From positions 289,301,402 through 289,365,401 of the forward strand of contig NC_085841.1 in assembly GCF_035594765.1 (NCBI RefSeq): DNA of 64,000 nucleotides. Direction: 5' to 3'. Below the pieces are notes generated by a model, which was not told the DNA's origin, ran no database searches, and worked only from the letters and a program-made list of their open reading frames with translations. Source of the DNA: Anolis carolinensis (taxonomy: Eukaryota). This document shows, in pieces, positions 1 through 60,825 of this stretch (positions are counted from its first letter, which is position 1; each line of letters begins with the position of its first letter). The translations under genes were made by a program, and so were the position numbers.

Positions 1-1462
1 TGGTTCTCCTGGATATCTCAGCGGCTTTCGATACCATCGACCATGGTATCCTTCTGGGACAACTCTCTGGGATGGGGCTCAGTGGCACGGTTCTGCAGTG
101 GCTCCGGTCCTTCCTGGAGGGTCGTTCCCAGATGGTGAAGCTGGGGGATACCTGCTTGGACCCCTGGCCATTGACCTGTGGGGTTCCGCAGGGGTCTATC
201 TTATCCTCCATGCTTTTTAACATCTACATGAAACCACTGGGAGAGGTCATCCGGAGTTTTGGAGGGCATGGCCATCTCTACGCAGATGACACGCAAATCC
301 ACTACTCGTTCCCATCTGACTCCAAGGAAGCCCCTCGGATGCTGAACCAGTGCCTGGCCGCTGTGGCGGACTGGATGAGGAGGAACAAGCTGAGAATCAA
401 TCCCGACAAGACAGAGGCCCTCCTGGTCAGTCGTGCGTCGGATCGGGGCATTGGTTGGCAACCTGTGCTGGACGGGGTTGCACTCCCCCTGAAATCACAG
501 GTCCGCAGTTTGGGGGTCCTCCTGGACTCAGCGCTGACGCTTGAGGCCCAGGTGTCGGCGGTGGCCGGGAGGGCCTTTGCACAACTCAAACTTGTGCGCC
601 AACTGCGACCATACCTTGTGAAGTCTGACTTGATCACGGTGGTACATGCCTTAGTTACCTCTAGACTGGCCTACTGTAATGCGCTCTACGTGGGGCTTCC
701 CTTGAAGACGGCCCGGAAATTACAATTGGTCCAACGCTCGGCTGCCAGATTAATAACGGGGGCAAGTTACAGGGAGAGATCCACTCCCTTGTTTAAGGAG
801 CTCCACTGGCTGCCGTTCATCTTCCGGTCCCAATTCAAGGTGCAGACCATCATCTATAAAGCCCTAAACGGTTTGGGACCCACCTACCTCCATGACCGTC
901 TCTCCCTCCATAAACCTGCCCGATCTTTACGATCATCCGGGGAGGCCCTTTTATCACCACTGTCGTTATCCCAGGCCCGCCTTGTGAGTACAAGGGAGAG
1001 GGCCTTTTCTGTTGTGGCCCCCCGACTATGGAACTCACTGCCTACTGAAATCAGGCAAGCTCCCACTTTGTTAGCTTTTAGGAAAGACCTGAAAACATGG
1101 CTCTTCCGCTGTGCTTTTGGTGAGTAACTTCTGTTATATATTTCTGTGTTACTCCCCCCAAACATCTATCCTCTAAACTGCCCCACTCTCATATGTCCCT
1201 GTACACATTAGAGTACCCCTCTGTCCCTCACACTCCGAATTTTATCTTTGTGTTCATGCGGCCTGCTCTTGTTTGACTGTTTCTTGATTTCTTGATGTGA
1301 TGTTTATTATTATGTATTGTATTATTTTTAATTATGTTATGATATGCTGTTTTATATTTTATTATATTGTATTGCTTTGGGCATGGCCCCATGTTAGCCG
1401 CCCCGAGTCCCTGCTGGGGAGATGGTGGCGGGGTATAAATAAAGTTTTATTATTATTATTAT
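1..1462 (+). mobile_element. L2-clade LINE, 3' part (RT, 3' UTR, (TTA)n tail); 5' end lies outside the window
   Basis: RT motifs LLDISAAFDTIDH, GVPQGSIL, YADDTQ and LHWLP. 3' end gccgccccgagtccc...ggcggggtataaataaa followed by (tta)n. Confidence 0.95.
3..1127 (+). CDS. L2 LINE ORF2 reverse transcriptase, C-terminal part, uninterrupted frame
   Basis: The frame of ORF 72..1127 is open back to base 3 (VLLDISAAFDTIDHGILLGQLSG) and contains the YADD catalytic motif. Confidence 0.9.
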   Translation, partial: VLLDISAAFDTIDHGILLGQLSGMGLSGTVLQWLRSFLEGRSQMVKLGDTCLDPWPLTCGVPQGSILSSMLFNIYMKPLGEVIRSFGGHGHLYADDTQIHYSFPSDSKEAPRMLNQCLAAVADWMRRNKLRINPDKTEALLVSRASDRGIGWQPVLDGVALPLKSQVRSLGVLLDSALTLEAQVSAVAGRAFAQLKLVRQLRPYLVKSDLITVVHALVTSRLAYCNALYVGLPLKTARKLQLVQRSAARLITGASYRERSTPLFKELHWLPFIFRSQFKVQTIIYKALNGLGPTYLHDRLSLHKPARSLRSSGEALLSPLSLSQARLVSTRERAFSVVAPRLWNSLPTEIRQAPTLLAFRKDLKTWLFRCAFGE

Positions 1463-2519
1463 AATGATGCAGCAAGTAGGGCCAAACAATGGGATCCAGG
1501 AAATATTTTCTGTGCAGCCAAAACATAGACTATCCAGAAAGGTGATACAAAGTCATCACAGTAAAGAAACCCACTAGGAATATTGAGAGCCTAATAGGGA
1601 CATCCTAATAGTGAATGTGTGAAAGTACTTCTCTGTCAGCCTGGAAGCTATATTCTGATCTTAAAATCTACACGAGAACTGGAGTGGAGGATTGGGTTAT
1701 GGCAGCTTAGCTAGCATTTCCATCCAGCAGAGAAGTGTGATTTTGTTCCAGAGATGGATTGTGATGCAAATCTGTAAGACGATAGTGTTGAACTGCCATG
1801 GCTTTGGGTCATGCCAGTATGGCGGTAGCTCTTGACAATAAAGATCTTATTGAGGGGAGCGGGAAAGCCAGTCTAACCTGTATTATTTTACTCAGTTACA
1901 TCTCCTTTCTGCATTTTGGGTTGAACTGCTTCCAGCCCTAATGTGCTGCTGAGCTGTTGCCAGTGCGCTTTTTATTAAGCAATGGTCTTAGAAAGCAAAA
2001 CCTGAGTCTTTAATGTGGCCTCTCCTACCTGTTTTAATACTGGTGAGAATAATCTTATATTTCACCAAAACTATGTGTATTTAGTTTCTGGCTTCCTGGA
2101 TAATTGAGGGTTCCTATTAAAAAGACTGGAACAATCCTGGCTATAGAAATAGGACTCTATATAGACCTCCTCTGTTTGGAATTAAAGGTGAAGGTGTTAA
2201 ACCTAGACAATAAAGCTCAGATCAAAGTAGCCAACAGAAGGGGGCTCCGAGAAGAGCAGATTGTCCCTTCGCATCACAGAAGGTGCCACCTCTCTTTTGC
2301 TGTAATTGAATTTCATGAAAGAGGCAAAGCTATTCTTTCCCAGTGTAATTCGACCAGGCTCCTGGCCAGATTGACAAGAGAAGCACCTGCTCCGTTTGCT
2401 TTCAGGTTTGGGCAACAGACCCTGGTAGCCCAATGGGAGTTGGTTAATCCACGGAGGCCATGACAACACCTGTCGGCCAAGCAAACCGTTAACATTATGA
2501 ATGTCTTAATATTATATAA

Positions 2520-2735
2520 GTATAGAGTTAGAAGGGACCACAAGGGTCATCCAGCCCAACCCCATTCTGCTATGCAGAAGGCACAATACTGAGAGATGAC
2601 CGTCCAGCCTTGGTTTTAAAACTTCCAGAGAAGGAGACTCTGCTTTGCTCCAAGGCAGCATATTCCACTGTAGAACAACTACCATCAGGAGGTTTTTTCC
2701 TAATGTTCAGATGGAATCTCTTTTTCTGGAGTATG
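2520..2735 (-). mobile_element. CR1 LINE 3' fragment
   Basis: agagttagaagggaccacaagggtcatccagcccaaccc...ttcctaatgttcagatggaatctc is the reverse complement of a CR1 3' end and matches 19320-19460. Confidence 0.8.
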
Positions 2736-5289
2736 AATTTGTTGCTCTGAGGATGTTATCGGACAAGGCTTGTAACCATGTTGGAGACTCCCTGGCCATA
2801 AATGAAAAAACTTACCATTGAATGATGTTGTCATAAATTCATTGCAAGCTAATATGCAGCTTGTGTTGAAGCAGTTCTTTTTGAAAATAAGGAAAATCCA
2901 TTTTAGGACTGCTAAATATGCATTCCAGGAAACTTTACAAATCTTTTCAGCCATGCCTGTAATCTGAAGTTGCTTCTGTAGTAACTTTGGGACCAGTGAT
3001 GTCTGCTGTGGGTGTGTTATAAGTATTCCTTTTATCTGCTGCAGTTACCTGTTCCCAGTCTGCTACCAATGCCACTTCTGGTTGGCAGACAGAGAAGACC
3101 TCTGGTTGCAAAGCTAGAAATTAATCTTTTCTCCCAGATTGCTTTCTTTTGTTTTAAATTTAGGAAACTGCAAACTTCTGTAATTGTATCAAGCCACTGA
3201 TATGGATTTCACCTCTTAAAGGTTTTCTTTCCTTGCAAGAAATTTTGCAGAACATTCTACTCATGCATTTTTTGCATCACTAAATAAGTTTACAAAATCA
3301 AAACAACATCTCTCATTGCAGAATGCACAAAATTGTAAAATGCTAATTTGTTTTTAAATAATAATTTAAGTGTTAATAGAATATTGAAAATACAAAAGTA
3401 CAGAGGTGGGCAGGGAAAAAGGCAGTCTTCTGAGATTGTGAATTCTTGGAGTTGTACAATTCTCAGAAAAAAAGAAAGAGATGGACAAAGAAGGGGAATG
3501 CACAGTTTAGAAGGAGTTACATCTTTGCAGCTGAGGTAAACTTAATACACCAAGATCCCTGTTTGACAAAATTTGAATTTTGTAGCATTGCTCTAGCTAT
3601 GATGTACATGAGCTGCAGAAGAACCAACTCAAACCCCTAAAGTTATAAAATCTTTTTGTGAATAGGGATGGAGGTTTATTCCACTGATATAATGAAATAA
3701 TTTTCATGGGCAGAAGGGTTTGAGCAATTAAAAATAGTTAAAAGTTGTTGAAGTGTTCTGTTTTTGTGATATAGGAACCTGTATGGAAATTCTTTCCACA
3801 TTGTTTTTGCCTTTTGTTTTTTTTGTTAAGGAAGAAATGTTCTGGAACTTCATTAACTGTGGCATACCTGTAAATTATTTCAAAAACTGTGTTACCACAT
3901 TTCCTTTTTTACTGATGAATCATTGAATATCTGTGTACATATGTGACAACTGGGAATGAATTTTCACACATTCTTGTATGTGAGTCCTGCAGCACAGAAA
4001 ATGTACATACATTATTATTTTTTCTTTGAAAGGTTTGGACAGGTAAACTTTAGTACTGAATGCTCAGCTTCAATGCTTGAAATTTGAGGACTGAAGGAAA
4101 AAAATTACTTTTTGGGGGGTGAGACAGTACTTATCCTTACGACACCCTTTGGCGTTAACCTGTCTGCATGAAAAAAGACACATAGAAAGCATCTGCTAGC
4201 TAAATGGCATTATTCTGGGCTTTTGTATTATATGTGTGAATAATGTATTCCAATATTTCCTTTATTTGTTCTTCTGAGCCTCATTCAAAGATTCAAATGC
4301 TGTCATACAATCAGAGGTCTGTTACCATGAGGGAAAACTGAGGCCAATTTGTAGTTCATGCTTGGGGATGTTTATGCAAATTTTATGTTCCTATCTTTAT
4401 AAGAGTTGTCTGGATTCTGTGTTAAAAGTTTGACTGGGCCCAGAAAAATGTTGTGGAGAACTCCGTACAAGAAAAACAGACCAAATGTTTTAAAATGTAG
4501 ATGAAATGTCAGGCACAGTATTTTCCCCCTTTGGCAAGGCTACCTCTAATTCAGTGGTTACTGCTGGAAGGCTTTTCTGCTTATTCCCCAGTGGGCAATG
4601 CTGGCTGTTGAAATGCAAAAAAGTAATTTTTCCAACCTCTGCCAGTTCACCTCATGGTATCCAAAACATCATAATTAATACAATTGGCAGTATTCTTATT
4701 TAACACATCTTGAAAAGGGACCCTACCTGCTAGACTCTTTCTGCTACAGCTAGTTAGGTTAGATTCGTTAAGTATTAAACAAACATTAGCCTGACTGAAA
4801 GTAAAAATATTTTTACCTGCCTCACTTCATATTTATTCTCATTAGATGCAGAGTTATAGTTCCCACTACAAGACATAGAAAAGGTGTTCACATAGGGCCT
4901 ATTCAACGCAGAGCTTGATGAAGTTATTTTTTAGGACAACAATTCCTGGAATCCTTCAGCCAGCATGTCCAGGGAAGTAGTTGCATAAAACGGTGCTTCT
5001 CAGACTTTGGTCTTTGATAGTTTTGGCCTTCCATAAACTCCCAGGCATCCCAGCCTAATGGAATAGCTGTGTCTTTCCATCTCTGTGTGTCATTCCTTCC
5101 TCCAATTTTCATGTCTTTTTCTTCTGAGTTGAATCCTGCTTTACATGTGATATGTTCCAAAGTAAAAGTAAAACAGCAAAGTAAAACAGATAGGGTAATA
5201 ACATTTTGCCTGTGCTGACCCCCTTTCCCAATTGGAAAGCATTCTATATCTGCATATTTTGTTTTCCTAGCCCTTTGTCCTGAGTAGAT

Positions 5290-7334: not shown

Positions 7335-7469
7335 CAGTGGTTCTCAACCTGTGGGTCCCCAGATGTTTTGGCCTTGAACTCCCAGAAATCCTAACAGCTG
7401 GTAAACTGGCTAGGATTTCTGGGAGTTGTAGGCCAAAACACCTGGGGACCAAAAGGTTGAAAACCACTG
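7335..7469. mobile_element. hAT MITE, 135 bp
   Basis: TIRs cagtggttctcaacct / aggttgaaaaccactg; 8-bp TSD ttctatac/ttctatat. Confidence 0.9.
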
Positions 7470-9398
7470 TTCTATATGCAGTACTTTAGCAAATGAGGGA
7501 CATACCAAAACATGTCATCGGGATCACCAGGAATGAGTGTAAGTTGTGTCAGCCCACTTCTCATTGCCCACAGATGGGACTGTGAGTGGTTTTATGTGGA
7601 GACGGAAGGGGAATAGCCAAGGGTGCTATAGCTCTAATTTTGTTCTTTTAAATGATTGATGCTGGCTTTGATAACTTATTTCATATCCTGAAAGGGAGTT
7701 CCTAACTCTAGTTATTACATTATATGTTTGAAGAACTGCCATGTTAGACTTCTGAAAGGCAAAGCTTTTATTCCTGGCATATCTTGTCTACTTTGTAGTT
7801 TGCCGCATGCTGTTGTTATTATTCTTTCAGTTTTGAATGGTTGCCACAACTTCATTGTGCAAATACCATTATCAGAAAGCAGTCCACATTATGAAGGAAT
7901 ACAGTGTGTTTTTTTTACTGTCACCTAGTTGATGATAGTTATCTCCAGCCATAAGACAGAGCAGGTGCTTCCATCCTATATTCTGAAGGTGCCACTGCAA
8001 TGAAAAGGTCACACAGTTGCTTCATGTCTCCTAGGGATATCATATTCACCAACATCTCACATGTGCCCAAGCAGCATCAGAGGTGGTCAAAATGATGGAA
8101 GAAAGAGCACAATCTATGAGAGATTGTTAGATTTTGCTTTTGAGTTTACAGTGAAAAGGCAAAACTCTTCCTGCTCCTATCCTCTTCCCTTGCTGAGTTA
8201 ATTGAGTGAAAACAACTTTTGTACTTTGAACTCAGCTTACAGCAATTGACATAAACTGAGGCAGAAGGAGAAAATGGGAGGAGAGAGAAACTAGGACTTT
8301 AAAAAATATCTTAAAAGAAGGACAAAAATTATGACTGTCTGCCAAATCAGGACAGTCACGGGGTATGGGATATGAAGAAGTACATTGGCTGTCCTTGGAA
8401 AAGATTGCATGTTGTTCCAGTATGTGGTTGGCACAGCATGTTCTTCTATAGCTATTTCTTTTTAATATATTAAAATGTTGTGCAAATCAAACTTAAATTG
8501 CAGTGCTTCCATGAAACAAAATAAACACACTTGCAACCCAAGTATTTCTGCCTGCAGGGTATATACCAGAAAGAACAGTGAGAAATATTGGTGTAATTCA
8601 TATAATTGTCTTTCTGTCTAGCTGCCAGCTGCACATGAACTTTCTGTACCTTTCTATACATGAAGGCATTTTCACTATCCAAAGCTGTTTTTTGAATAGA
8701 AGGGGGTGTAGCCATGTTGACACTAAACCAGTTTTCAGGGCCTATGATGGGTCATGTAGCAAAAAAAAAAAATAAAATAAAAAAACCCAAAGAAACCTGT
8801 ACAAATGAGTTGGTGCAACTTCTATGAACACAAGCACACATTTTGCTTCTAAGTAGATTGCTTTGGTCAATGTTATTAGCCTAATGGAAGTTATCGCTAC
8901 TTCTAGTACGACCCATAACTAGAATGATGAAAAGTAGCTCTAATCTTTTCTCTTGGACACCGTATGCAGACTATGGGAGCCTCCATCATTCATACTATGA
9001 AGCACTTTACATCACCTACAAGATAGTGATAGAGAGCTGAAACAGAACGTCTGTCATCTTGCAGGCTCTATCTAAAGAGACTGTGACCACAGGTCATCTA
9101 AGTTCAAATTAGAGTCTGTCCTGATAGCTTCTTACCTGGTAAAAAGATGTGGAAATCTGGAATATTTGCATGTTTTGTGATCTTGGCTTTAGACCAGTAA
9201 AGGTCACCCTACTATGATTTGCATGTGGTTATTATAGTTTCCCTTATCAGTCTCACATTCCTCATTGAAGATAATACTTGCTGGATTTTAATTTTTGATT
9301 TTTACCCCGGAAGGGCACAGTACTTCTGTTAGATGTTTGATTGACAAATTTGGGAGGTTTTATTGGTGCTGTTCCAAATTGATCCAAATTGCTTTGAA

Positions 9399-10082
9399 CC
9401 CGTAGTCGACAAACTAAGGGCAAAATGGCCTATCTGTGCTGTGCGCATGCGCACAGCACAGATAGGCCATTTGGCCCTTACTTCCTGGTCGCGCCCGCCG
9501 ATCGCCCGGCGGCCGAGACCAGGAGGTAAGGGCCAAATGGCCTATCTGTGCTGTGCGTATGCGCACAGCACAGATAGGCCATTTTGCCCTTAGTTTGTCG
9601 ACTACGGGCTATCTGTGCTGTGCCAAAATGTTTGTCGACTACGGGCTATCTGTGCTGTGCCAAATGGCCTATCTGTGCCGGGCGATCGGCGGCCGCGACC
9701 AGGAAGTAAGGGCCAAATGGGCTATCTGTGCTGTGCCCGTGCGCACAGCACATATAGGCCATTTGGCCCTTACTTCCTGGTTGCGCCCGCCGGGCGATCG
9801 GCAGCCGCGACCAGGAAGTAAGGGCCAAATGGGCTATCTGTGCTGTGCGCATGGGCACAGCACAGATAGCCCATTTGGCCCTTACTTCCTGGTCACGCCC
9901 GCCGATCGCCCGGCGGCCGAGACCAGGAGGTAAGGGCCAAATGGGCTATCTGTGCTGTGCGCACGGGCACAGCACAGATAGCCCATTTGGCCCTTACTTC
10001 CTGGTCGCGGCCGCCGATCGCCCGGCACAGATAGGCCATTTTGCCCTTAGTTTGTAGACTAAGGGCAAAATGGCATATCTGT
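9399..10082. repeat. Nested palindromic tandem array: five hairpin units with a 112-bp period, grouped into two larger palindromes
   Basis: Hairpin centres at about 9447, 9559, 9739, 9851 and 9963. Higher-order palindromes at 9399-9608 and 9662-10041; a further hairpin at 10028-10082. Confidence 0.95.
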
Positions 10083-10230
10083 TTTCAGCGGTTTGGCGCG
10101 GGCGCAGGGATTGAAGCCCCGCGTGGCCGCGCCAACACCAGGGGCGTCGGTGGCGCTACGGGCTGCTGTCGACGCCTCGACAGCGCCCGAGGCGGCCGCA
10201 TCAGCGGCCTCTTATAATCAACCGGCCCTG
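10083..10230. mobile_element. Terminal and subterminal region of a CAGGGCCGG-type hAT element; partner end not found
   Basis: Ends accggccctg at 10221-10230, the same terminus as 45018-45027. GC-rich subterminal gcgcccgaggcggccgc. Confidence 0.65.
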
Positions 10231-12024
10231 CTGTGTGACTTGAAAGGTCCCTAAGGCATGGCTGATACTGAAAAAAAATAATCTCTTGTTTTCTTGGGAT
10301 ACACGAAGCTGTAATTTGGCTACCAAAGGCAATGTGTCTACATATCTCCACTGTCACAGCTATTTTGGCAGCTGAATGTTCCAAGTCCAGAACAAACATT
10401 CCATCCCACTGAAATATTGAGGCTGTCTGACTTAGTGCTGGAAAAAATGATGTTAATTACTTCTGTGTGGGCATGCCCATTGGCCATTATCAGTCTCTAG
10501 GATGCCACTTGTATTTCAACACAGCCTTTCCAGCTTCATTGGGATAGCCAAGAGTGTGATTTTGAACAATTTGGTCTCAGTGAGAAAGTGGAATCTTTCT
10601 CCAATGAAAAAAGTGGCTGGCATGAGCAGTGCAGTTTGCAAGAGTGGGGCAGCCGGTGGCCAAGTTGGGAAGCAGAGGACAGAAATCAGTGCTTTGATCA
10701 ACTATAAAGCATAACAACAGCTGTGTTGAGAAGGTTTGCTGTGGTTTAGCTGGCATTTATCTCTTTTGCAAAGTGAAGGCATTGTAAACCGGTAAAAATT
10801 AACTGCCAGAGCACAATGCTGTTTTTGTGACTTTGGAATTCAGATAAAGCCTTGCTACTCTTGGCAGGCTGATGAAAAGAACGGAGCATTTGCATACAGG
10901 TGAGGCCAAGGGGGGAATGGAGTTCAGGTCAGTGCCAGGTATGCAAAGTGCCTCCAGCTGTGAGGGCCCTCTTTTAGTCAAGCTGGAGGGCAACCAATGG
11001 CAGCGAGGAGCAGGCATTTTTTTTTCCTTTTGGAAAGGGGCAATACCGAGAAAGGTCATTGGATGGCAGCAAAGCATTTGACACTTGTAAGCTTCGCTTC
11101 AGAGCAATCTCTCCAAGTCCCACATGGTGATTTCCAGGGATTGTCAATCAGCAAGCTGGAGACAGCAGACCTGAGACTATATCCAAGCTTGCAACAAGTT
11201 GGCTCAAAACATCCTGGCATGCCTTTTGAACAGAAGGAGTTCTGAGCTAGCCATTCTCAGACATGATCCCTCTGAACCACTGTTAAATAACTGACTCAGA
11301 CTCTCCATCCCTCCAGTGGAAAGCTGCCACCTTTCTTAAAGGAAGGATTTTGGTGCCTTTAATAACAGCTTCTGGGAATGCCTAACCTGTTGGATTTCTG
11401 CCTTACACACCCCCAGACTCCTGCCAGATAAAACACTTGCACCCCAAATCTGTTTTGTGGTTAAGGTGACAACCCAAAATGCGGCAGTTATACTGGCACA
11501 TCTTCTTCCAGTCTCACACAAGAGGACAAAGATCAAAAACAAAGATAGAGAAGCTCTGTCATGCCATCAGCCACAATCAGAGCTTAGAAATGTTTAATTT
11601 TGGGGACAAACTCATCTTCAAATGACTGTTGGGTACGTGAGGACCTTAAAATGTTAAAATCAAGTCTTTTAGTCTTGTATCATATATGAGCAATTCTTAT
11701 GTAGTGCAAAAAGCATAAAGTAAGCATTAAAAGATTCTGACCCATGAATTCTTTTTGAACATCAGAACTGAATGCACAGATTTTCCATCTAGAAATAAAC
11801 TCCTTCCTCCTGTCCAGCTGTTTTCAGCAGTTGATAGAATGCTGAGAACAGGACTTTGAATGGACTGGTGATGCATGTATTTTAAGAAACAAACTTTTAA
11901 ATTGGTTATTACAATAGTATTTTAATATTGGGATAATTAAGTTATGTCTTAACATTATACCTTTCTTCCCAGTTTTATTTGAACTTGTTTAAACCTTGTT
12001 GTGAGCTACCCTTGATTGCCAACC

Positions 12025-20821: not shown

Positions 20822-21144
20822 CAGTAGAATCTCACTTATCCAACACTCGCTTATCCAATGTTCTGGATTATCCAACGCATTTTTGTAGTCAATGTTTTCA
20901 ATACATCGTGATATTTTGGTGCTAAATTCGTAAATACAGTAGTTATTACATAGCATTACTGCATATTGAACTACTTTTTCTGTCAAATTTATTGTATAAC
21001 ATGATGTTTTGGTGCTTAATTTGTAAAATCATAACCTAATTTGATGTTCAATAAGGTTTTCCTTAATCCCTCCTTATTATCCAACATATTCATTTATCCA
21101 AAATTCTGCCGGCCCTCTTATGTTGGATAAGTGAGACTCTACTG
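20822..21144. mobile_element. Tc1/mariner MITE, 323 bp
   Basis: TIRs cagtagaatctcacttatccaaca / tgttggataagtgagactctactg; TA TSD; three full copies in the window. Confidence 0.95.
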
Positions 21145-24585: not shown

Positions 24586-24720
24586 CAGTGGTTCTAAACG
24601 TGGGGTCCTCAGATGTTTTTGGCCTTCAACTCCCAGTAAGCCTAACAGCTGGTAAACTGGCTGGGATTTCTGGGAGTTGTAGGCCAAAAACATCTGGGGA
24701 CCCCAGGTTGAGAACCACTG
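24586..24720. mobile_element. hAT MITE
   Basis: TIRs cagtggttct / agaaccactg; near-identical to 7335-7469; flanks gtcctaga/gtcttaga. Confidence 0.9.
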
Positions 24721-34804: not shown

Positions 34805-35820
34805 ATGGACAAGGCTCCATCGGGACCACCAAACGCAGCCATGCCCAATCGCGAATCAAGGAACAGGAAAGGCACTGCAGACTAACTCAACCAGCCATAG
34901 CAGAGCACTTGATGAACCCACCTGGAGACAGCGTATTATTGGAGAACGCACAAATGCTGGACCATTCTCACAACCACCATGCCAGGCTACACAGAGAAGC
35001 CATTCAAATCCACAAGCATGTGGACCATTTCAACAGAAAGGAGGAAACCATGAACATGGACAAAACCTGGCTACCAGTATTATAAAAACTCTAAAATCAG
35101 GACAGTAAATAAAGAACAACACTCTGAAAACAGAGGAATTCCAGGCTAGAAACAATCAGGGCCAGCTAACACCTCCCAACAAAGGATTCCCTTAGGCAAG
35201 AAGCAGCCAGGCTTTGAAGCTGCAAAGCATTTCAATGGTAATCAAGGTGGCCAATTGCACCATTCACACTTGCCACAAACAGACAAAGAATTCTTTCTCC
35301 CACCCTGGACATTATTCCACATATATACAGTAGAGTCTCACTTATCCAACATTCGCTTATCCAACATTCTGGATTATCCAACACATTTTTGTAATCAATG
35401 TTTTCAATACATAATGATATTTTGGTGCTAAATTAGTAAATACAGTGATTACTACATAGCATTACTACATTTTGAACTACTTTTTCTGTCAAATTTGTTG
35501 TATAACATGATGTTTTGGTGCTTAATTTGTAAAATCATAACCTAATTTGATGTTTAATAGACTGTTCCTTGATCCCTCCTTATTATCCAACATATTCACT
35601 TATTCAACATTCTGCTGGCCTGTTTATGTTGGATAAGTGAGACTGTACTGTATATACAAACCCCACTTGCCTAGTTTCCAACAGACCTCACAACCTCCGA
35701 GGATGCCTGCCATAGATACGGGTGAAACGTCAGGGAAGAATGCTCCTGGCACATGACCATACAGCCCAGAAAACTCACAGCAACCCAGTGATTCAGGCCA
35801 TGAAAGCCTTCCGACAACAC
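34805..35820 (+). mobile_element. Penelope-like element 3' part (GIY-YIG endonuclease remnant plus pLTR), with a mariner MITE inserted
   Basis: GQGSIGTTKRS..SRIKEQERHCRL..AIAEH...REAIQIHKH..FNRKEE matches the PLE Uri/GIY-YIG domain. Confidence 0.92.
35328..35650. mobile_element. Tc1/mariner MITE nested in Penelope
   Basis: Same TIRs as 20822-21144; inserted at a TA in the Penelope atatata run. Confidence 0.95.
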
Positions 35821-41880: not shown

Positions 41881-42751
41881 AGCCTCACCCTCTGTAGGTT
41901 ATTCCTCAGATGTATACAATCTTAACTCTGAAATGGTACTGAAATCTTTCCCTGTTTCTGGAGCCTGATAGAGGATAACCTCCAGAAGTTCAGGGCTACC
42001 TATCTACTGCCATGGGGACACAGTAGGATTTTGTGGAGGAATAAATACCAGTATATAGATTTAAAATGCCTGATTCCTCTCTCCCTCCCTCTCACCAGGG
42101 ACCTCTCACCTACATGTTGTATGTCAGGAAGGTGAGGACAGGGTGACTGCTTATTATTTTGAATGGACCCCTTTTGCCTCTGTGGGTCAAAGTCCAAGTA
42201 GCTGATTCTTTGGGGCTCCCCTATGATGAAAACAAATGTTGAGAATGAAGCTAGTGAAACCTATGGCACATCTACATTGAAAGTTGGTGTGACCTAAGAT
42301 CAGCCCCGGAACAGTGAAGCTCCACACAGCTTTCTTCCTGGATACGTTAACTTAGGGAAAAACCTGAATCCCGAGCCAGGAGTTGGGTTGTCCCCAAAGT
42401 TAAGGGTATCAAGACAGTGGGGCCGGTTCCTAACCTTGAGAGCCACTCTATGATCCCCAGGGCCGGCCCTAGGAAATTTTCAAGTGTAAGCAAGCAGTAA
42501 TTTTGGCACCCCCCCCCCCGACAAACCAATCACTGAAAAATAAAAGGTAGAAGGTAGAGGTGACTAGAACACACACACGGCACATATGGTCCCTGCATAT
42601 GTGTTTGTATGTGTGTTTGTATGTATCTTATATATACATACACATACACACAATGTGGAAAATATGTGGCAAGGTAGATAGATAGGTAGGGAGCCACAGC
42701 AGAAGAACCCTCCCTGGAGCAAGGCCTAATAATAATAATATTAATAAATCA

Positions 42752-42972
42752 TCCCAACAAAAGAAGGAAGCAGCCAAGCAACTGAAACATTTATACCTGC
42801 CTCCAACAGACAAGAGTTCTTTCTTTCTCCCATCCTGGACATTCTGCAGATATATAAACCCCACTTAATTAGTTTCCAACCTCTAAGGATGCCTGCCATA
42901 GATGCAGACGAAATGTCAGGAGAGAATGCTTCTGGAACATGGCCATACAGCCCAAAAAGCTCACTGCAACCC
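42752..42972 (+). mobile_element. Penelope pLTR fragment inside the hAT element
   Basis: tcccaacaaa...acaagagttctt...ggatgcctgccatagatgcag...caaccca. Confidence 0.85.
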
Positions 42973-43294
42973 ACTTGTCTTTACTGTATTACACAAATGT
43001 AATGTGCACCTCACTTTTGGAATAGTCATTTAGGCAAAAAAGGTGTGGCTGAGATTGATGTAATATGGTAATTTTGGCCTTCTTACTCTGATAGAAGCTT
43101 CAATAGGGCTACAGTAACTAGGGTTTGGCATTTTAGAGAATATACTCAGCATGATAACTATGGTGCTTATCCTCTGCTGAGCATGAGAATGATGAGCAGA
43201 CATTGTTTTCAACCTCTGACAACTCTGATGGCAAAGCTGGGGTGATTTACTTGAAGTGGGGACAAACTTAGTAGATGTGGGCGAAACGTCAGTA

Positions 43295-43617
43295 CAGTAG
43301 AGTCTCACTTATCCAACATAAACGGGCCGGCAGAACGTTGGATAAGCAAATATGTTGGATAATAAGGAGGCATTAAGGAAAAGCCTATTAAACATCAAAT
43401 TAGGTTATGATTTTACAAATTAAGCATCAAAACATCATGTTATACCACAAATTTGACAGAAAAAGTAGTTCAATACACAGTAATGCTATGTAGTAATTAC
43501 TGTATTTACGAATTTAGCACCAAAATATCACAATGTATTGAAAACATTGACTACAAAAATGTGTTGGATAATCCAGAACGTTGGATAAGCAAGTGTTGGA
43601 TAAGTGAGACTCTACTG
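43295..43617. mobile_element. Tc1/mariner MITE inside the hAT element
   Basis: Same TIRs as 20822-21144; TA TSD. Confidence 0.95.
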
Positions 43618-43619
43618 TA

Positions 43620-44670
43620 TTTTAAAAACTCTAAAATCAGGACAGTAAATAAAGAACACCACTCAGAAAACAAAGGAAACAATCAGGGCCAGCTAACACC
43701 GCCCAACAAAAGATTACCACAGGCAGAAAGCAGCCAGGCTTTGAAGCTGCAAGACTATTTAATGCTAATCAAGGTACCTCAGACAAGAGTTCTTTTGCCC
43801 ACCCTGAACATTCCACAGATATATAAACCCCGTTTGCCTAGTTTCCAAGAGACCTCACAACCACTGAGAGAAGAAGGAGGGAGAGAGGGAGGGAGGAAGA
43901 AGAGGGGGATCCTCAATCAGGGCAAGCTAACACATCCCAACAAAGGATTACCCCAGGCAAAAAGCAGCCAGGCTTTGAAGCTGCAAGGCTATTTAATGCT
44001 AATAACAGTGGCCATTTGCAACATTCACATGTGCCTCAGACAAGAGTTCTTTTCCCCACCCTGAACATTCCACAGATATATAAACCCCACTTGCTTTGTT
44101 TCCAACAGACCTCACAACCACTGAGAGTGCCTGCCATAGATGCAGGCGAAACGTCAGAAGAGAATGCTTCTGGAACATACCTATAAACTCACCAGAGACT
44201 GGGAAAACTGCCAATGAATGTCCATNNNNNNNNNNNNNNNNNNNNNNNNNNNNNNNNNNNNNNNNNNNNNNNNNNNNNNNNNNNNNNNNNNNNNNNNNNN
44301 NNNNNNNNNNNNNNNNNNNNNNNNNNNNNNNNNNNNNNNNNNNNNNNNNNNNNNNNNNNNNNNNNNNNNNNNNNNNNNNCCAGGGGATCCTCAATCAGGG
44401 CAAGCTAACACATCCCAACAAAGGATTACCCCAGGCAAAAAGCAGTCAGGCTTTGAATCTGCAAGGCTATTTAATGCTAATAACGGTGGCCATTTGCAAC
44501 ATTCACATGTGCCTCAGACAAGAGTTCTTTTCCCCACCCTGAACATTCCACAGATATATAAACCCCACTTGCTTTGTTTCCAACAGACCTCACAACCGCT
44601 GAGAGTGCCTGCCATAGATGCAGGCGAAACGTCAGGAGAGAATCTTTCTGGAACATTGCCAGATAGCCCA
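43620..44670 (+). repeat. Three tandem Penelope pLTR units (about 43620-43870, 43905-44185, 44380-44670)
   Basis: Repeated caatcagggc(c/a)agctaacac...cctcacaacc(a/g)ctgagag; units 2 and 3 differ at only a few positions. Confidence 0.9.
44226..44379. other. Assembly gap
   Basis: Run of N. Confidence 1.
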
Positions 44671-45427
44671 TGAGCCGCCATCTTGATTGGGCCAAGCGCG
44701 GGCTAAGGAGGGGGCGGGGCCGAAGGGCACTTCCAAGGCACTCCTTCGGAAGCAGGAGGCGTGGTCTCCTGGGAGGGGTGTGCCCTCTGTGCCCTTAGGC
44801 CCCAGCCCTGCCCCCTCCGCAGCCTCAAAGCCTGGCTGCAAGGCAGAAAGGGAGAGCAGGTAAAAGAGGAAGGAGGGAGGGAAAAGAGGGAGAAGAGGGA
44901 GGGCGCTTTTGGGCGATGGTGCTGTGCGTGCACGTTGGTGCACGCACAGAATTAGGCCTCAACAGCGCCCCCTTCCACGTGCGCCCAAAGCCGTGGCTTC
45001 ATCCGCGTCAACGTTGGACCGGCCCTGATGATCCCTGAGCTCTCTTGTCCTCTCCCAGTGTCATAGCTGGTAACAGCCACAATACACCTATCTACCTTCT
45101 GTTGGGAGGTCTGGTTGCTGTCAACTAAACTGCAGCCTTACTAAGGAGGCTGGGCAGGGGAATGTGGTTGTTGTTGTTGTTGTTGTTGGTTTCCCCCTTC
45201 TTAACTGCCATAGTGAGAGAGAGATAACATCAGCCAGTGCACCCCAAGATTCAGGTCTATGGGTGTGTCATGGCTGCTTCCAGCTGTGACATGAGGGAGA
45301 ACTTTTTGGGTGGCTGCCCAGTGGTGCTGCACTATGTTCAGAACTGTGTCCCCTAACAGGCTGCCAATCAATGCAGCGGTTGGGACACTGAATAGAGCCT
45401 GCTTCAGCTGTCTGTGAAGAACCCCCC

Positions 45428-59682: not shown

Positions 59683-60501
59683 CAGAGGCGGTCCATCGGC
59701 GAGGCCAATTAGGCGGTCACCTGTAACGCATTGTTCCCGGGGGTGCCTGGAGGCGCTCCCGCAGCGGCAGTGGCCCAAAAAGCGATCCCCATGCCATTTT
59801 TCTGCTTTGCAGAGTGGAGATCGCCTTCCTGGCCAGAAGGAAGGCGATCCCCACTTTGCCAAGCAAAGAAACACAGCTTTTCTTCTTGGTGAGGTGGGGA
59901 TCGCCTTCCTTCTGGCCAGAAGGGAGGTGATTCCCCACTTTGCCAAGCAAAGAAACGCAGCTATTCTTCTTGGCGATTGTGGGGATTGCCTTCCTTCTGG
60001 CCAGAAGAGAGGTGATCCCCACTTTGCCAAGCAGAGAAACCCCACTCTGGAGCCCACGTCGGACCTTTCGGTGGGCCAGGCGGGCCTTCCGGAGCCTACG
60101 CTGGGCCTTCTGGAGTCTGCTGCCGTCTGTTGGAAGCAAGGCATGTGGGGTTTATTTGTCTGTTGAATAATGACCAGGGTGGGAGAAAGAGCTCTTGTCT
60201 ATTAGGAGGCAGGTGTGGATGTTGTAATTAATCACCTTGATTAGCATTTAATGGCACTGTGGCTTCAAGGTTTCCTCTTGCCTGGGAGAATCTTTTTTTG
60301 GGAGTTGTTAGCTGTCCCTGATTGCTTCCTGTCTGGATTTCCCCTGAGTGTTGTTCTTTATTTAGGCTTTTCCTTAATCCCTCCTTTTTATCCAACATTT
60401 TCATTTATCCAACGCTTTTATTTTTCAGTTAATTGTTTTTTTTGGGGGGGCACCAAAATTTCTATTTGCCTATACTTGAAAATTACCTTGGACCTGCTCT
60501 G
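59683..60501 (-). mobile_element. Composite hAT element of the same family as 42458-45027, with palindromic array, Penelope and MITE fragments
   Basis: Reverse complement of 60440-60501 (cagagcaggtccaaggtaattttcaagtataggc..aattttggtgcccccc) matches 42458-42520; other end cagaggcggtcc; TSD degenerate. Confidence 0.8.
59806..60045. repeat. Palindromic minisatellite, three units of about 84 bp
   Basis: gtggggatcgccttccttc-tggcca-gaagggaggtgattccccac; centres at about 59832, 59915 and 60000. Confidence 0.9.
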
Positions 60502-60825
60502 GATACATTTTGCCCTCTCTTTAAAGCTGCTTAAGGAAAATGCTTTGTCAGGATTTCATTATGCATTAGCCTAAATTCTCCACGGTCTCTCTCCCCCCCA
60601 CTCCTTCCTTTCCTTCTCTTATTTTCAGTATTCATAACTCATCCTTCACTCAAAAAGGTTCCTAGGATGCATCTACACTGTAGAATTAATGTTGTTTGCT
60701 GTCACTTTAACTGTCATGGCTCAATGCTTTAGAATAATAATGCTCTGAAATTCCTAGAGTTGTGATATCATCCTATTCATCATGTGATCTCTGACTGGAC
60801 GTAATCATTCACATGAGTAGTCCAG

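What the first reader, a model, noticed from the sequence alone, without database searches (positions are those of the whole stretch)
9399..10230. Nested palindrome array built by successive fold-back duplications at a hAT end
Seen: an ~84-bp hairpin (gaccaggaagtaagggccaaatggNctatctgtgctgtgc-tip-reverse complement) plus a GC spacer repeats every 112 bp. Units 1-2 form a 210-bp palindrome (9399-9608) and units 3-5 form a 380-bp palindrome (9662-10041). The tip variants of unit 3 (gcccgtgcgc) and unit 5 (gcgcacgggc) are mirror images, so the inversion came after that mutation. The spacer plus the ggaggtaag variant is duplicated in direct orientation (9491-9530 vs 9895-9935), and a direct duplication of about 37 bp joins the two blocks. 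CpGs are largely retained, which suggests it is young or unmethylated. One hAT-type terminus (accggccctg, 10230) is present, but no partner end or TSD. Inference: repeated template switching, or resolution of the flanking-DNA hairpins that hAT excision is known to create, amplified the hairpins. The DNA could extrude alternative cruciforms or yield long dsRNA.
Basis: partly seen in the sequence, partly recalled or inferred. Interest (0 to 1): 0.8.

Follow-up and report, generated by a model that had tools for sequence, protein, structure and literature searches.

The report
Truncated hairpin-array hAT transposon fragment
This is an 832-bp, one-ended, non-coding piece of a very abundant young cut-and-paste (hAT-type) transposon of the green anole, with an interior made of stacked DNA hairpins; the structure is real and striking, but the kind of element is ordinary.

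Summary
Window 9399-10082 is a CpG-rich stack of hairpins: a 210-bp palindrome, a 386-bp palindrome, a 112-bp x3 array and a 37-bp tandem duplication. A GC-rich 148-bp tail follows and ends in CAGGGCCGGTTG (read on the minus strand) at 10230. No second end and no target-site duplication are in the window.

It is a truncated, immobile copy of a non-autonomous hAT family. In three independent green-anole read sets, k-mer depth over the element is about 20-700 times that of the single-copy flanks. Both junctions with unique DNA recur in other individuals. Two other elements with CAGRGSCGG ends in the same window also carry hairpins just inside a GC-rich end.

The fold-back idea is partly right. 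Asymmetric loops and tips are flipped across the big palindrome. However, all but one mismatch lie in its inner half; the outer arms are an exact 91-nt inverted pair, and the joining segment is a mosaic of 6-22-nt templated pieces. This fits template switching or snap-back synthesis on inherited hairpin modules. It does not fit resolution of hAT flank hairpins.

Unit number across the palindromes is not independently confirmed. This scan had already noted the same kind of element at several other places in this genome. Interest is low to moderate.

The parts
9399..10230 (-). One-ended fragment of a non-autonomous hAT-type transposon, read from its retained GC-rich end on the minus strand. It is non-coding.
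   Evidence: It has a terminal CAGGG motif. High-copy k-mer depth is confined to 9331-10298, with single-copy flanks on both sides. ORFs only run through the repeats. There is no related sequence elsewhere in the window.
10219..10230 (-). Terminal motif CAGGGCCGGTTG, the only end of the element that is present.
   Evidence: The same 9-nt CAGGGCCGG ends both sides of the element at 42458-45027, which has an 8-bp target duplication ATGATCCC. The right junction 10205-11600 is present in contigs of X1, X2 and X10 (table 8).
10083..10230 (-). GC-rich subterminal tail (GC 70%, CpG o/e 1.15) with short GC hairpins.
   Evidence: It resembles the GC-rich end type of the elements ending at 59683 and 45027. 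Depth is about 330-640 times the flank.
10027..10082 (.). Innermost small hairpin next to the tail: 25-nt arms around the TTGTAG loop.
   Evidence: I21: 25-nt arms, 96% complementary, 6 nt apart. Also.
9659..10044 (.). 386-bp palindrome of three 86-bp hairpins (units 3-5) and their spacers, centred on the tip of unit 4.
   Evidence: I1: 193-nt arms, 94% complementary, 0 nt apart. Spacer loops and tips are flipped across the centre. There are 11 mismatches, 10 of them in the inner half.
9662..9752 (.). Left copy of an exact 91-nt inverted duplication; its partner is 9951-10041. It is probably the copied arm.
   Evidence: longest exact repeat in the region; P about 0.008. The right partner runs on into the canonical tail, whereas the left copy abuts the mosaic joint. 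Which arm is the copy is an inference.
9951..10041 (.). Right copy of the exact 91-nt inverted duplication; probably the template.
9687..10026 (.). 112-bp x 3.0 periodic array (an 86-bp hairpin plus a 26-bp GC spacer).
   Evidence: The eight 40-nt arms differ from their consensus at 7 of 320 positions.
9593..9664 (+). 37-bp tandem duplication inside a mosaic joint. The stretch 9609-9661 is pieced from 16-, 6-, 15- and 16-nt exact copies of nearby element sequence, direct and inverted.
   Evidence: A contig 9593-9659 with no differences at single-copy depth (6.05) is present in run X2 (record 28).
9399..9608 (.). 210-bp palindrome (units 1-2) centred on a spacer, with exact 50-nt outer arms.
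   Evidence: I6, and (9399-9448 ~ 9559-9608). A contig 9480-9554 with no differences at depth 6.0 is present in run X1 (record 6).
9391..9399 (.). Truncation junction: unique flank ...GCTTTGAA joined to CCCGTAGTCGAC inside a small hairpin. There is no terminal motif and no target duplication.
   Evidence: A contig 8000-9432 without differences is present in X1 and X2 (records 1 and 25). The left flank is single-copy and has no repeat in the window.

Best explanation
Window 9399-10230 is a dead, one-ended remnant of a non-autonomous hAT-type DNA transposon. The family is abundant, young and CpG-rich in the green anole, and its members carry arrays of GC-rich hairpins just inside one (GC-rich) terminus.

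The copy inserted by cut-and-paste, which explains the precise CAGGGCCGGTTG end at 10230. It later lost its other terminus and the adjoining target duplication, either by a break and end-joining inside a hairpin or by abortive excision or repair. It can therefore no longer move.

The hairpin modules themselves were inherited from the source copy. Their nested-palindrome arrangement comes from strand or template switching during replication or repair synthesis. A nascent strand that has copied one arm of a hairpin can fold back or jump to the complementary arm of the same or a neighbouring unit and copy backwards. That produces inverted duplications whose switch points are hidden in identical modules. 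The exact 91-nt inverted pair is the youngest such event.

Iterated microhomology-primed synthesis (SD-MMEJ / polymerase-theta style) gives the mosaic joint and the 37-bp tandem duplication.

Shown: the structure, its copy number, the junctions in other individuals, the flipped asymmetric markers and the mosaic composition.

Inferred: the order of events, the enzyme pathway, and whether the last events happened at this locus or in the donor copy.

At this locus it most likely does nothing beyond being a potential cruciform-forming, fragile, CpG-island-like stretch.
For: Structure.

Abundant family: summed k-mer depth over 9331-10298 is 121-3,468 against about 7 on the flanks in X1, 55-2,754 against about 8-11 in X2, and 1,500-34,073 against about 46 in X10 (table 2). 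The change is sharp at both edges.

Same modules in other orders in other copies: joints that skip 193, 225, 227 and 291 nt or go back, with inserted letters (tables 5 and 5c).

Locus real in other individuals: left junction contig 8000-9432 in X1 and X2; right junction 10205 onward in X1, X2 and X10; internal contigs 9480-9554 and 9593-9659 exact at single-copy depth (table 8).

hAT identity:
- The CAGGG terminus fits YARNG.
- In the same window, the element 42458-45027 has CAGGGCCGG at both ends and an 8-bp duplication ATGATCCC.
- The element at 59683 begins with CAGAGGCGGTCC, which matches the published anole hAT-N6/7/8 TIR CAGAGSCGGYCC. Those families have about 1,000 or more copies, 0.6-2.4% divergence and no known autonomous partner (PMC3014272).

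Shared architecture: an 84-bp x 2.7 hairpin array lies about 130 nt inside the GC-rich end of the 59683 element. A hairpin lies about 85-115 nt inside the GC-rich end at 45027. The end types are compared.

Species: the TIRs and lengths of hAT-N1_AC (135 bp, at 7335-7469) and TcMar-N7_AC (323 bp, three copies) match the published anole tables.

Inverted copying: flipped spacer loops and tips, and a mirrored idiosyncratic junction.

Two-phase palindrome and mosaic joint.

Mechanism precedent: secondary-structure-driven snap-back or loop-out synthesis and consecutive rounds of annealing and synthesis (PMC5728401; PMC2943611).

Youth: CpG o/e is 0.82-1.15 against 0.12 in the flanks.
Against: - No other full copy of this exact family could be fetched, so I could not check directly that a consensus carries the same array. 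Depth summed over contigs at 85% likeness or more is only a rough copy number.
- The terminus CAGGGCCGGTTG matches the published CAGAGSCGGYCC at only 8 of 12 positions, so membership in hAT-N6/7/8 is not shown.
- With one end and no target duplication, hAT membership of this copy rests on the terminal motif and on relatives.
- Short-read contigs cannot span the palindromes, so the number of units is not independently confirmed.
- The single-copy-depth contigs at 9480-9554 and 9593-9659 show that part of the arrangement is specific to this locus.
- No empty-site allele was seen. The related species' contigs do not align across 8551-10316, so the original target site and the extent of the deletion are unknown.
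Confidence: 0.75

Rival explanations
1. A single hairpin next to a hAT end was amplified at this very locus, after insertion, by successive fold-back duplications, so the whole nested array is a local product.
For: Flipped loops and tips and the mirrored junction show inverted copying. The exact 91-nt inverted pair and the 49-nt direct pair look recent. Contigs 9480-9554 and 9593-9659 sit at single-copy depth, so those stretches are locus-specific.
Against: The module k-mers are tens to hundreds of times more abundant than the flanks in three individuals, and other copies join them in other orders. Other CAGRGSCGG elements in the same window carry hairpin arrays at the same position. Mismatches are not spread as nested single fold-backs predict.
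Confidence: 0.12
2. The hairpins derive from opening and repair of the hairpin-capped flanking DNA that hAT excision creates.
For: hAT excision does make DNA hairpins (PMC5499845), and the array adjoins a hAT end.
Against: Those hairpins cap the donor flanks, outside the element, and repair leaves small footprints at the donor site. From general knowledge of hAT and V(D)J repair, opening such hairpins adds only a few palindromic nucleotides. Here 86-bp hairpins lie inside the element, 150-830 nt from the end, and are high-copy genome-wide. The flank beyond 10230 shows no palindrome.
Confidence: 0.02
3. Assembly artefact: collapsed or mis-joined repeat copies, or a fold-back chimera, produced a palindrome that does not exist in the genome.
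For: Palindromes and high-copy repeats are hard to assemble. The window has N gaps elsewhere. No independent contig spans the array, and the unit number is unverified.
Against: Both junctions with unique DNA are reproduced without differences in runs from different studies, as are two internal locus-specific stretches (9480-9554, and 9593-9659 covering the 37-bp duplication), the latter at single-copy depth (table 8). No N run lies within 18 kb of the array.
Confidence: 0.06
4. A functional hairpin-RNA or miRNA-cluster locus: the 86-nt hairpins are transcribed and processed into small RNAs.
For: The hairpins have pre-miRNA-like size, and Rfam miRNA models align to them.
Against: All Rfam matches are far below the gathering scores (for example 103 against 137, 51 against 84). 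They hit many unrelated families on both strands, as any perfect hairpin would. No holder run is on record as RNA. The modules are transposon sequence.
Confidence: 0.05

Closest known systems
Anolis carolinensis orphan non-autonomous hAT families hAT-N6_AC, hAT-N7_AC and hAT-N8_AC (Novick et al. 2010, PMC3014272)
   Same: Same genome. They are non-coding, very young (0.6-2.4% divergence) and have about 1,000 or more copies. Their 12-nt terminus CAGAGSCGGYCC shares CAG.G.CGG with this end. No autonomous partner is known. A canonical member lies in this window at 59683 and also holds a hairpin array.
   Different: The terminus here is CAGGGCCGGTTG (8 of 12 positions match). The interior sequence is unrelated to the 59683 element. 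The paper does not mention hairpins or palindromes. This copy lacks one end and the target duplication.
Fractured or one-ended hAT copies such as fractured Ac (fAc) of maize (from general knowledge; not checked in a paper here)
   Same: One genuine transposon terminus plus part of the interior, joined to unrelated DNA without a target duplication. The copy is immobile on its own.
   Different: fAc derives from an autonomous element and was defined genetically. Here the parent is a non-autonomous hairpin-array element, and the breakpoint lies in a hairpin.
Foldback-type transposons with long, internally repetitive inverted repeats, such as Drosophila FB and Galileo (from general knowledge)
   Same: The element body is dominated by palindromic or inverted tandem repeats that can snap back. 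Repeat number varies among copies.
   Different: In those elements the repeats are the terminal inverted repeats themselves, and the superfamilies differ. Here the array is internal, beside a short hAT terminus.
[quoted passage not shown]
   Same: Snap-back and loop-out priming at hairpin-forming sequence, several consecutive rounds of annealing and synthesis, and short direct and inverted templated pieces. This matches the mosaic at 9609-9661.
   Different: Reported templated insertions are usually a few to tens of nucleotides. The 91-nt inverted copy here is longer and may instead reflect replication-fork strand switching.
Flip/flop hairpin termini of parvoviruses (a structural analogy only)
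   Same: Asymmetric loops occur in both orientations (GATCGCCC and GGGCGATC; T3 and T5).
   Different: No terminal hairpin, no replication protein and no linear genome. Inversion of a palindrome with an asymmetric centre gives the same pattern without rolling-hairpin replication.

Membership tests
hAT superfamily (non-autonomous member) | Terminal motif YARNG at the element end | tested here: met
   The end reads CAGGG... on the minus strand at 10230. The rule is as stated in PMC3014272.
hAT superfamily (non-autonomous member) | Pair of short terminal inverted repeats | tested here: not met
   Only one end is present in 64 kb. The copy is truncated at 9399.
hAT superfamily (non-autonomous member) | 8-bp target-site duplication | tested here: not met
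   CTGTGTGA beyond 10230 has no partner on the + strand. The 8 nt left of 9399 are GCTTTGAA. An element with the same 9-nt terminus at 42458-45027 does have an 8-bp duplication, ATGATCCC.
hAT superfamily (non-autonomous member) | Dispersed multi-copy family in the genome | tested here: met
   Summed k-mer depth is about 20-700 times the flank in three individuals, with sharp edges at 9399 and 10230. This is a rough measure.
hAT superfamily (non-autonomous member) | Mobilised by a hAT transposase with matching ends | not testable with these tools
   There is no transposase ORF in the fragment. The literature names no autonomous partner for CAGAGSCGG-type ends (PMC3014272).
hAT-N6/N7/N8_AC of Anolis carolinensis | 12-nt TIR CAGAGSCGGYCC | tested here: not met
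   CAGGGCCGGTTG differs at positions 4, 10, 11 and 12. This is a related group, not these families.
hAT-N6/N7/N8_AC of Anolis carolinensis | Sequence similarity to the family consensus | not testable with these tools
   Repbase and Dfam consensus sequences are not on hand. The one canonical member in the window (59683-60502) shares no interior sequence with this fragment.
Known miRNA / hairpin RNA families (Rfam 15) | Score at or above the family's gathering threshold | tested here: not met
   The best match is MIR1858 at 103.3 bits against a gathering score of 137. All 37 matches are below threshold.

The most novel reading that the evidence does not exclude
The hairpin-array hATs of the anole may form a distinct, self-expanding class. 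Each round of transposition-linked gap repair or replication through the array would add or invert units by snap-back synthesis, like an accordion. Copies would then differ in unit number and orientation, and long perfect palindromes such as the exact 91-nt pair here would be continually created, break the element (as at 9399) and possibly feed hairpin RNAs that silence the family. This fragment would be a caught intermediate of that cycle.
Probability: 0.2. Interest if true: 0.5.

Novelty: new member of a known kind. Interest (0 to 1): 0.27.

Why it matters
The finding shows that a spectacular nested palindrome in a vertebrate genome is one broken copy of an abundant transposon family, not a unique locus-level invention. 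The fine structure is a clean natural record of strand switching on hairpin DNA: flipped loops, an exact 91-nt inverted pair, and a mosaic of 6-22-nt templated pieces. The family could serve to study how palindromes grow and break in vertebrate germ lines. The published survey of anole DNA transposons does not mention hairpins or palindromes, so a family-level description might still be worth a short note. This single copy adds little beyond that.

Tried and rejected
- Partner end or target duplication in the window: none found.
- Rest of the element displaced elsewhere in the window (nested insertion): blastn found only 12-15-nt chance matches.
- Other copies in public collections: exact 26-mer scans of metagenome and viral contigs gave 0 hits. 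Those collections are not expected to hold lizard DNA, so this says nothing.
- Earlier notes of this scan by sequence: blank.
- Rfam: only sub-threshold hairpin look-alikes.
- Coding capacity: ORFs only read through the repeats.
- Literature search on the terminus strings returned only primers and unrelated matches. A search for anole + hAT + hairpin + palindrome gave nothing relevant.
- RNA evidence: no holder run is on record as RNA, so the dsRNA idea stays untested.
- Empty-site allele: no contig in X1, X2 or X10 skips 9399-10230.
- The related species (X19) aligns only to 8000-8550 and 10317-11556, so the ancestral site could not be read. The hole in X10 over 8484-9330 proves nothing, by the tool's own caveat.
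- An early guess that only about 170 bp are missing (a symmetric element) was dropped. The three related elements in the window turned out to have two different end types.

Full report
**What is there**

Reading 9000-10700 shows AT-rich, CpG-poor unique DNA up to 9398. From 9399 to 10082 lies a GC-rich block built almost wholly from one about 31-nt module (TAAGGGC[C]AAATGG[C/G]CTATCTGTGCTGTGC) in alternating orientation. A 148-nt GC-rich tail (10083-10230) follows and ends ...ATCAACCGGCCCTG. After it the DNA is unique and CpG-poor again.

The module meets its mirror image at three kinds of centre:
- a tip (GCGCATGCGC and variants);
- a 26-nt GC spacer flanked by GACCAGGAAGTAAGGG;
- a small loop (AGTTTGTMGACTA).

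- a 210-bp palindrome, 9399-9608, 96%;
- a 386-bp palindrome, 9659-10044, 94%, with no gap between the arms;
- a 112-bp x 3.0 period, 9687-10026;
- a 37-bp x 2 tandem duplication, 9593-9664.

The 22-nt core occurs 14 times against 0.00 expected. As single-stranded DNA the stretch folds into two giant hairpins at -453 kcal/mol, z = -48. CpG observed/expected is 0.82-1.15 inside against 0.12 in both flanks.

**Which genome, and what kind of end**

Earlier notes of this scan name the green anole. I checked this independently. The window holds elements with exactly the TIRs and lengths published for Anolis carolinensis (PMC3014272): hAT-N1_AC (135 bp, 7335-7469 and 24586-24720) and TcMar-N7_AC (323 bp, three copies).

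The end at 10230 reads CAGGGCCGGTTG on the minus strand, which fits the hAT terminal rule YARNG. Two relatives lie in the same window:
- 42458-45027 has CAGGGCCGG at both ends and a perfect 8-bp target duplication, ATGATCCC.
- The element at 59683 begins with CAGAGGCGGTCC. That is the published TIR CAGAGSCGGYCC of the orphan families hAT-N6/7/8_AC. Those families have about 1,000 or more copies each, 0.6-2.4% divergence and no known autonomous partner.

The fragment itself has only this one end. No second CAGGGCCGG-like end faces it anywhere in 64 kb. The 8 nt beyond the end (CTGTGTGA) have no partner. No other part of the element lies elsewhere in the window. It holds no credible ORF.

**Family or local invention**

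I laid the contigs of four public runs on 8000-11600. Three were green-anole individuals from three studies, and one was a related species.

In the three green anoles the flanks sit at single-copy depth (about 7, 8-11 and 46). Summed k-mer depth over 9331-10298 is 121-3,468, 55-2,754 and 1,500-34,073. The change is sharp at both edges. The tail, which occurs once per element end, is about 330-640 times the flank.

Contigs from other copies join the same modules in other orders. They skip 193, 225, 227 or 291 nt, or go back, sometimes with a few extra letters (tables 5 and 5c). The modules and the tail therefore belong to an abundant family with variable internal arrangement. The tool warns that summed depth is not a copy number, so I use it only as an order of magnitude.

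Independent support comes from the window itself:
- The 59683 element carries an 84-bp x 2.7 array of alternating hairpins about 130 nt inside its GC-rich end.
- The 45027 end has a hairpin about 85-115 nt inside.
- An alignment of the five ends shows two end types, AT-rich (GGAAATTTTCAAGT) and GC-rich. This fragment keeps the GC-rich type.

Hairpins just inside the GC-rich end are thus a shared trait of this group of anole hATs. Four earlier follow-ups of this scan reached the same view on other copies. I list them as agreeing, not as evidence.

**Is the locus real**

- X1 and X2 each hold a contig 8000-9432 without a single difference, which covers the left junction.
- X1, X2 and X10 hold the right junction (10205 onward).
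- X1 holds 9480-9554, and X2 holds 9593-9659 (most of the 37-bp duplication). Both are exact and at single-copy depth (table 8).

This argues against misassembly of the junctions. It also shows that parts of the arrangement are specific to this locus. Short-read contigs cannot span the palindromes, so the number of units remains unverified.

No contig skips the element, so no empty allele was seen among the three animals. The related species aligns only to 8000-8550 and 10317-11556, and its contig runs on unlike the window left of 10317. The ancestral site cannot be read. The hole in X10 over 8484-9330 is left unexplained (note 3).

**How the palindromes arose**

A tandem array of perfect hairpins is automatically palindromic at every scale, so I used the asymmetric markers.

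- The spacer loop reads GGGCGATC at the two spacers left of unit 4 and GATCGCCC at the two spacers to its right.
- Tips T3 (GCCCGTGCGC) and T5 (GCGCACGGGC) are reverse complements.
- An odd junction, where a spacer is cut short and joined to CACAGATAGG, occurs in mirror image at 9669-9689 and 10014-10035.

The 11 mismatches between the 193-nt arms are not spread evenly, however. Ten lie in the inner 99 nt. The outer part contains an exact 91-nt inverted pair, 9662-9752 ~ 9951-10041. A clean run that long has P about 0.008 given 11 mismatches. Three of the inner mismatches recur at the same relative positions in the 210-bp palindrome. They are therefore an old asymmetry of the spacer module, not decay after a fold-back. 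A single fold-back at the tip of unit 4 does not fit. A later inverted copy of about 91 nt, with its switch point hidden inside identical modules, does.

The segment joining the two blocks is a mosaic:
- 22 nt, inverted copy of 9399-9420;
- 16 nt, direct copy of 9722-9737;
- 6 nt, matching 9422-9427;
- 15 nt, inverted copy of 9399-9413;
- 16 nt, direct copy of 9722-9737 again;
- then the 91-nt inverted copy.

By my reading of the junction sequences, the pieces overlap by only 1-3 nt. This pattern matches iterated snap-back or loop-out priming at structure-forming sequence, as described for SD-MMEJ (PMC5728401; PMC2943611). It would also fit fork-associated strand switching. The pathway is my inference.

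hAT transposases put the hairpin on the flanking donor DNA, not on the element (PMC5499845), and repair leaves small footprints at the donor site. Here 86-bp hairpins lie inside the element and are high-copy.

**The missing end**

The break at 9398|9399 falls at the base of a small hairpin (CCCGTAGT CGACAA ACTAAGGG). I take it as a deletion or abortive excision-and-repair event that removed the other terminus and the target duplication. Palindromes are known break sites (general knowledge). How much was lost cannot be said, because related elements have two unlike ends.

**Function**

Nothing indicates one. Rfam gives only sub-threshold matches of many unrelated miRNA models to both strands, as any perfect hairpin would. 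No run holding the stretch is recorded as RNA. The CpG richness fits youth: the eight arms differ from their consensus at 7 of 320 positions. By my reading of the mismatch contexts, only about three CpG-to-TpG/CpA changes are visible (9782, 9803, 9895). Hypomethylation cannot be excluded.

**Verdict**

This is a real, striking structure, but it is one truncated copy of an abundant, known kind of element (non-autonomous hAT). The scan has met this kind several times in this genome. Local construction of the whole array and the flank-hairpin idea are not supported.

Noticed in passing
window 59683-60502: A non-autonomous hAT whose left end, CAGAGGCGGTCC, equals the published hAT-N6/7/8_AC TIR. 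Its right end is a decayed GGACCTGCTCTG. It holds an 84-bp x 2.7 array of alternating hairpins at 59814-60040. I could not read its 8-bp duplication cleanly (GTTATACA against GATACATT).
   Followed up: partly
window 42458-45027: A 2.57-kb hAT with CAGGGCCGG at both ends and the 8-bp duplication ATGATCCC. Its two ends are of unlike types (AT-rich left, GC-rich right). It holds a TcMar-N7_AC copy (43295-43617) and an N gap (44226-44379). An earlier first-reader note (s1-603534) calls it a cargo carrier.
   Followed up: partly
window 7335-7469 and 24586-24720: Two 135-bp copies of the MITE hAT-N1_AC (TIR CAGTGGTTCTCAACCTGTGG), matching the published length and TIR.
   Followed up: yes
window 20822-21144, 35328-35650, 43295-43617: Three 323-bp copies of TcMar-N7_AC (TIR CAGTAGAGTCTCACTTATCC), each exactly the published length.
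   Followed up: yes
window 8121-8362: A short high-copy repeat (about 8191-8261) in the left flank. Its summed depth is 530-4,170 against 7-46, and it is also abundant in the related species (570). It was not identified.
   Followed up: no
window 8484-9330: Run X10 (same species, right flank 46x) has no contig laid here, while X1 and X2 cover it without differences. The related species also stops at 8550 and resumes at 10317. This could be the tool's filter, a haplotype difference or divergence.
   Followed up: no
window 10317-11556: The right flank is better conserved in the related species (57 differences and 16 gaps over about 1,240 nt) than the left flank 8000-8519 (56 differences over 520 nt). 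It may be a conserved non-coding or exon-bearing stretch; I did not examine it.
   Followed up: no
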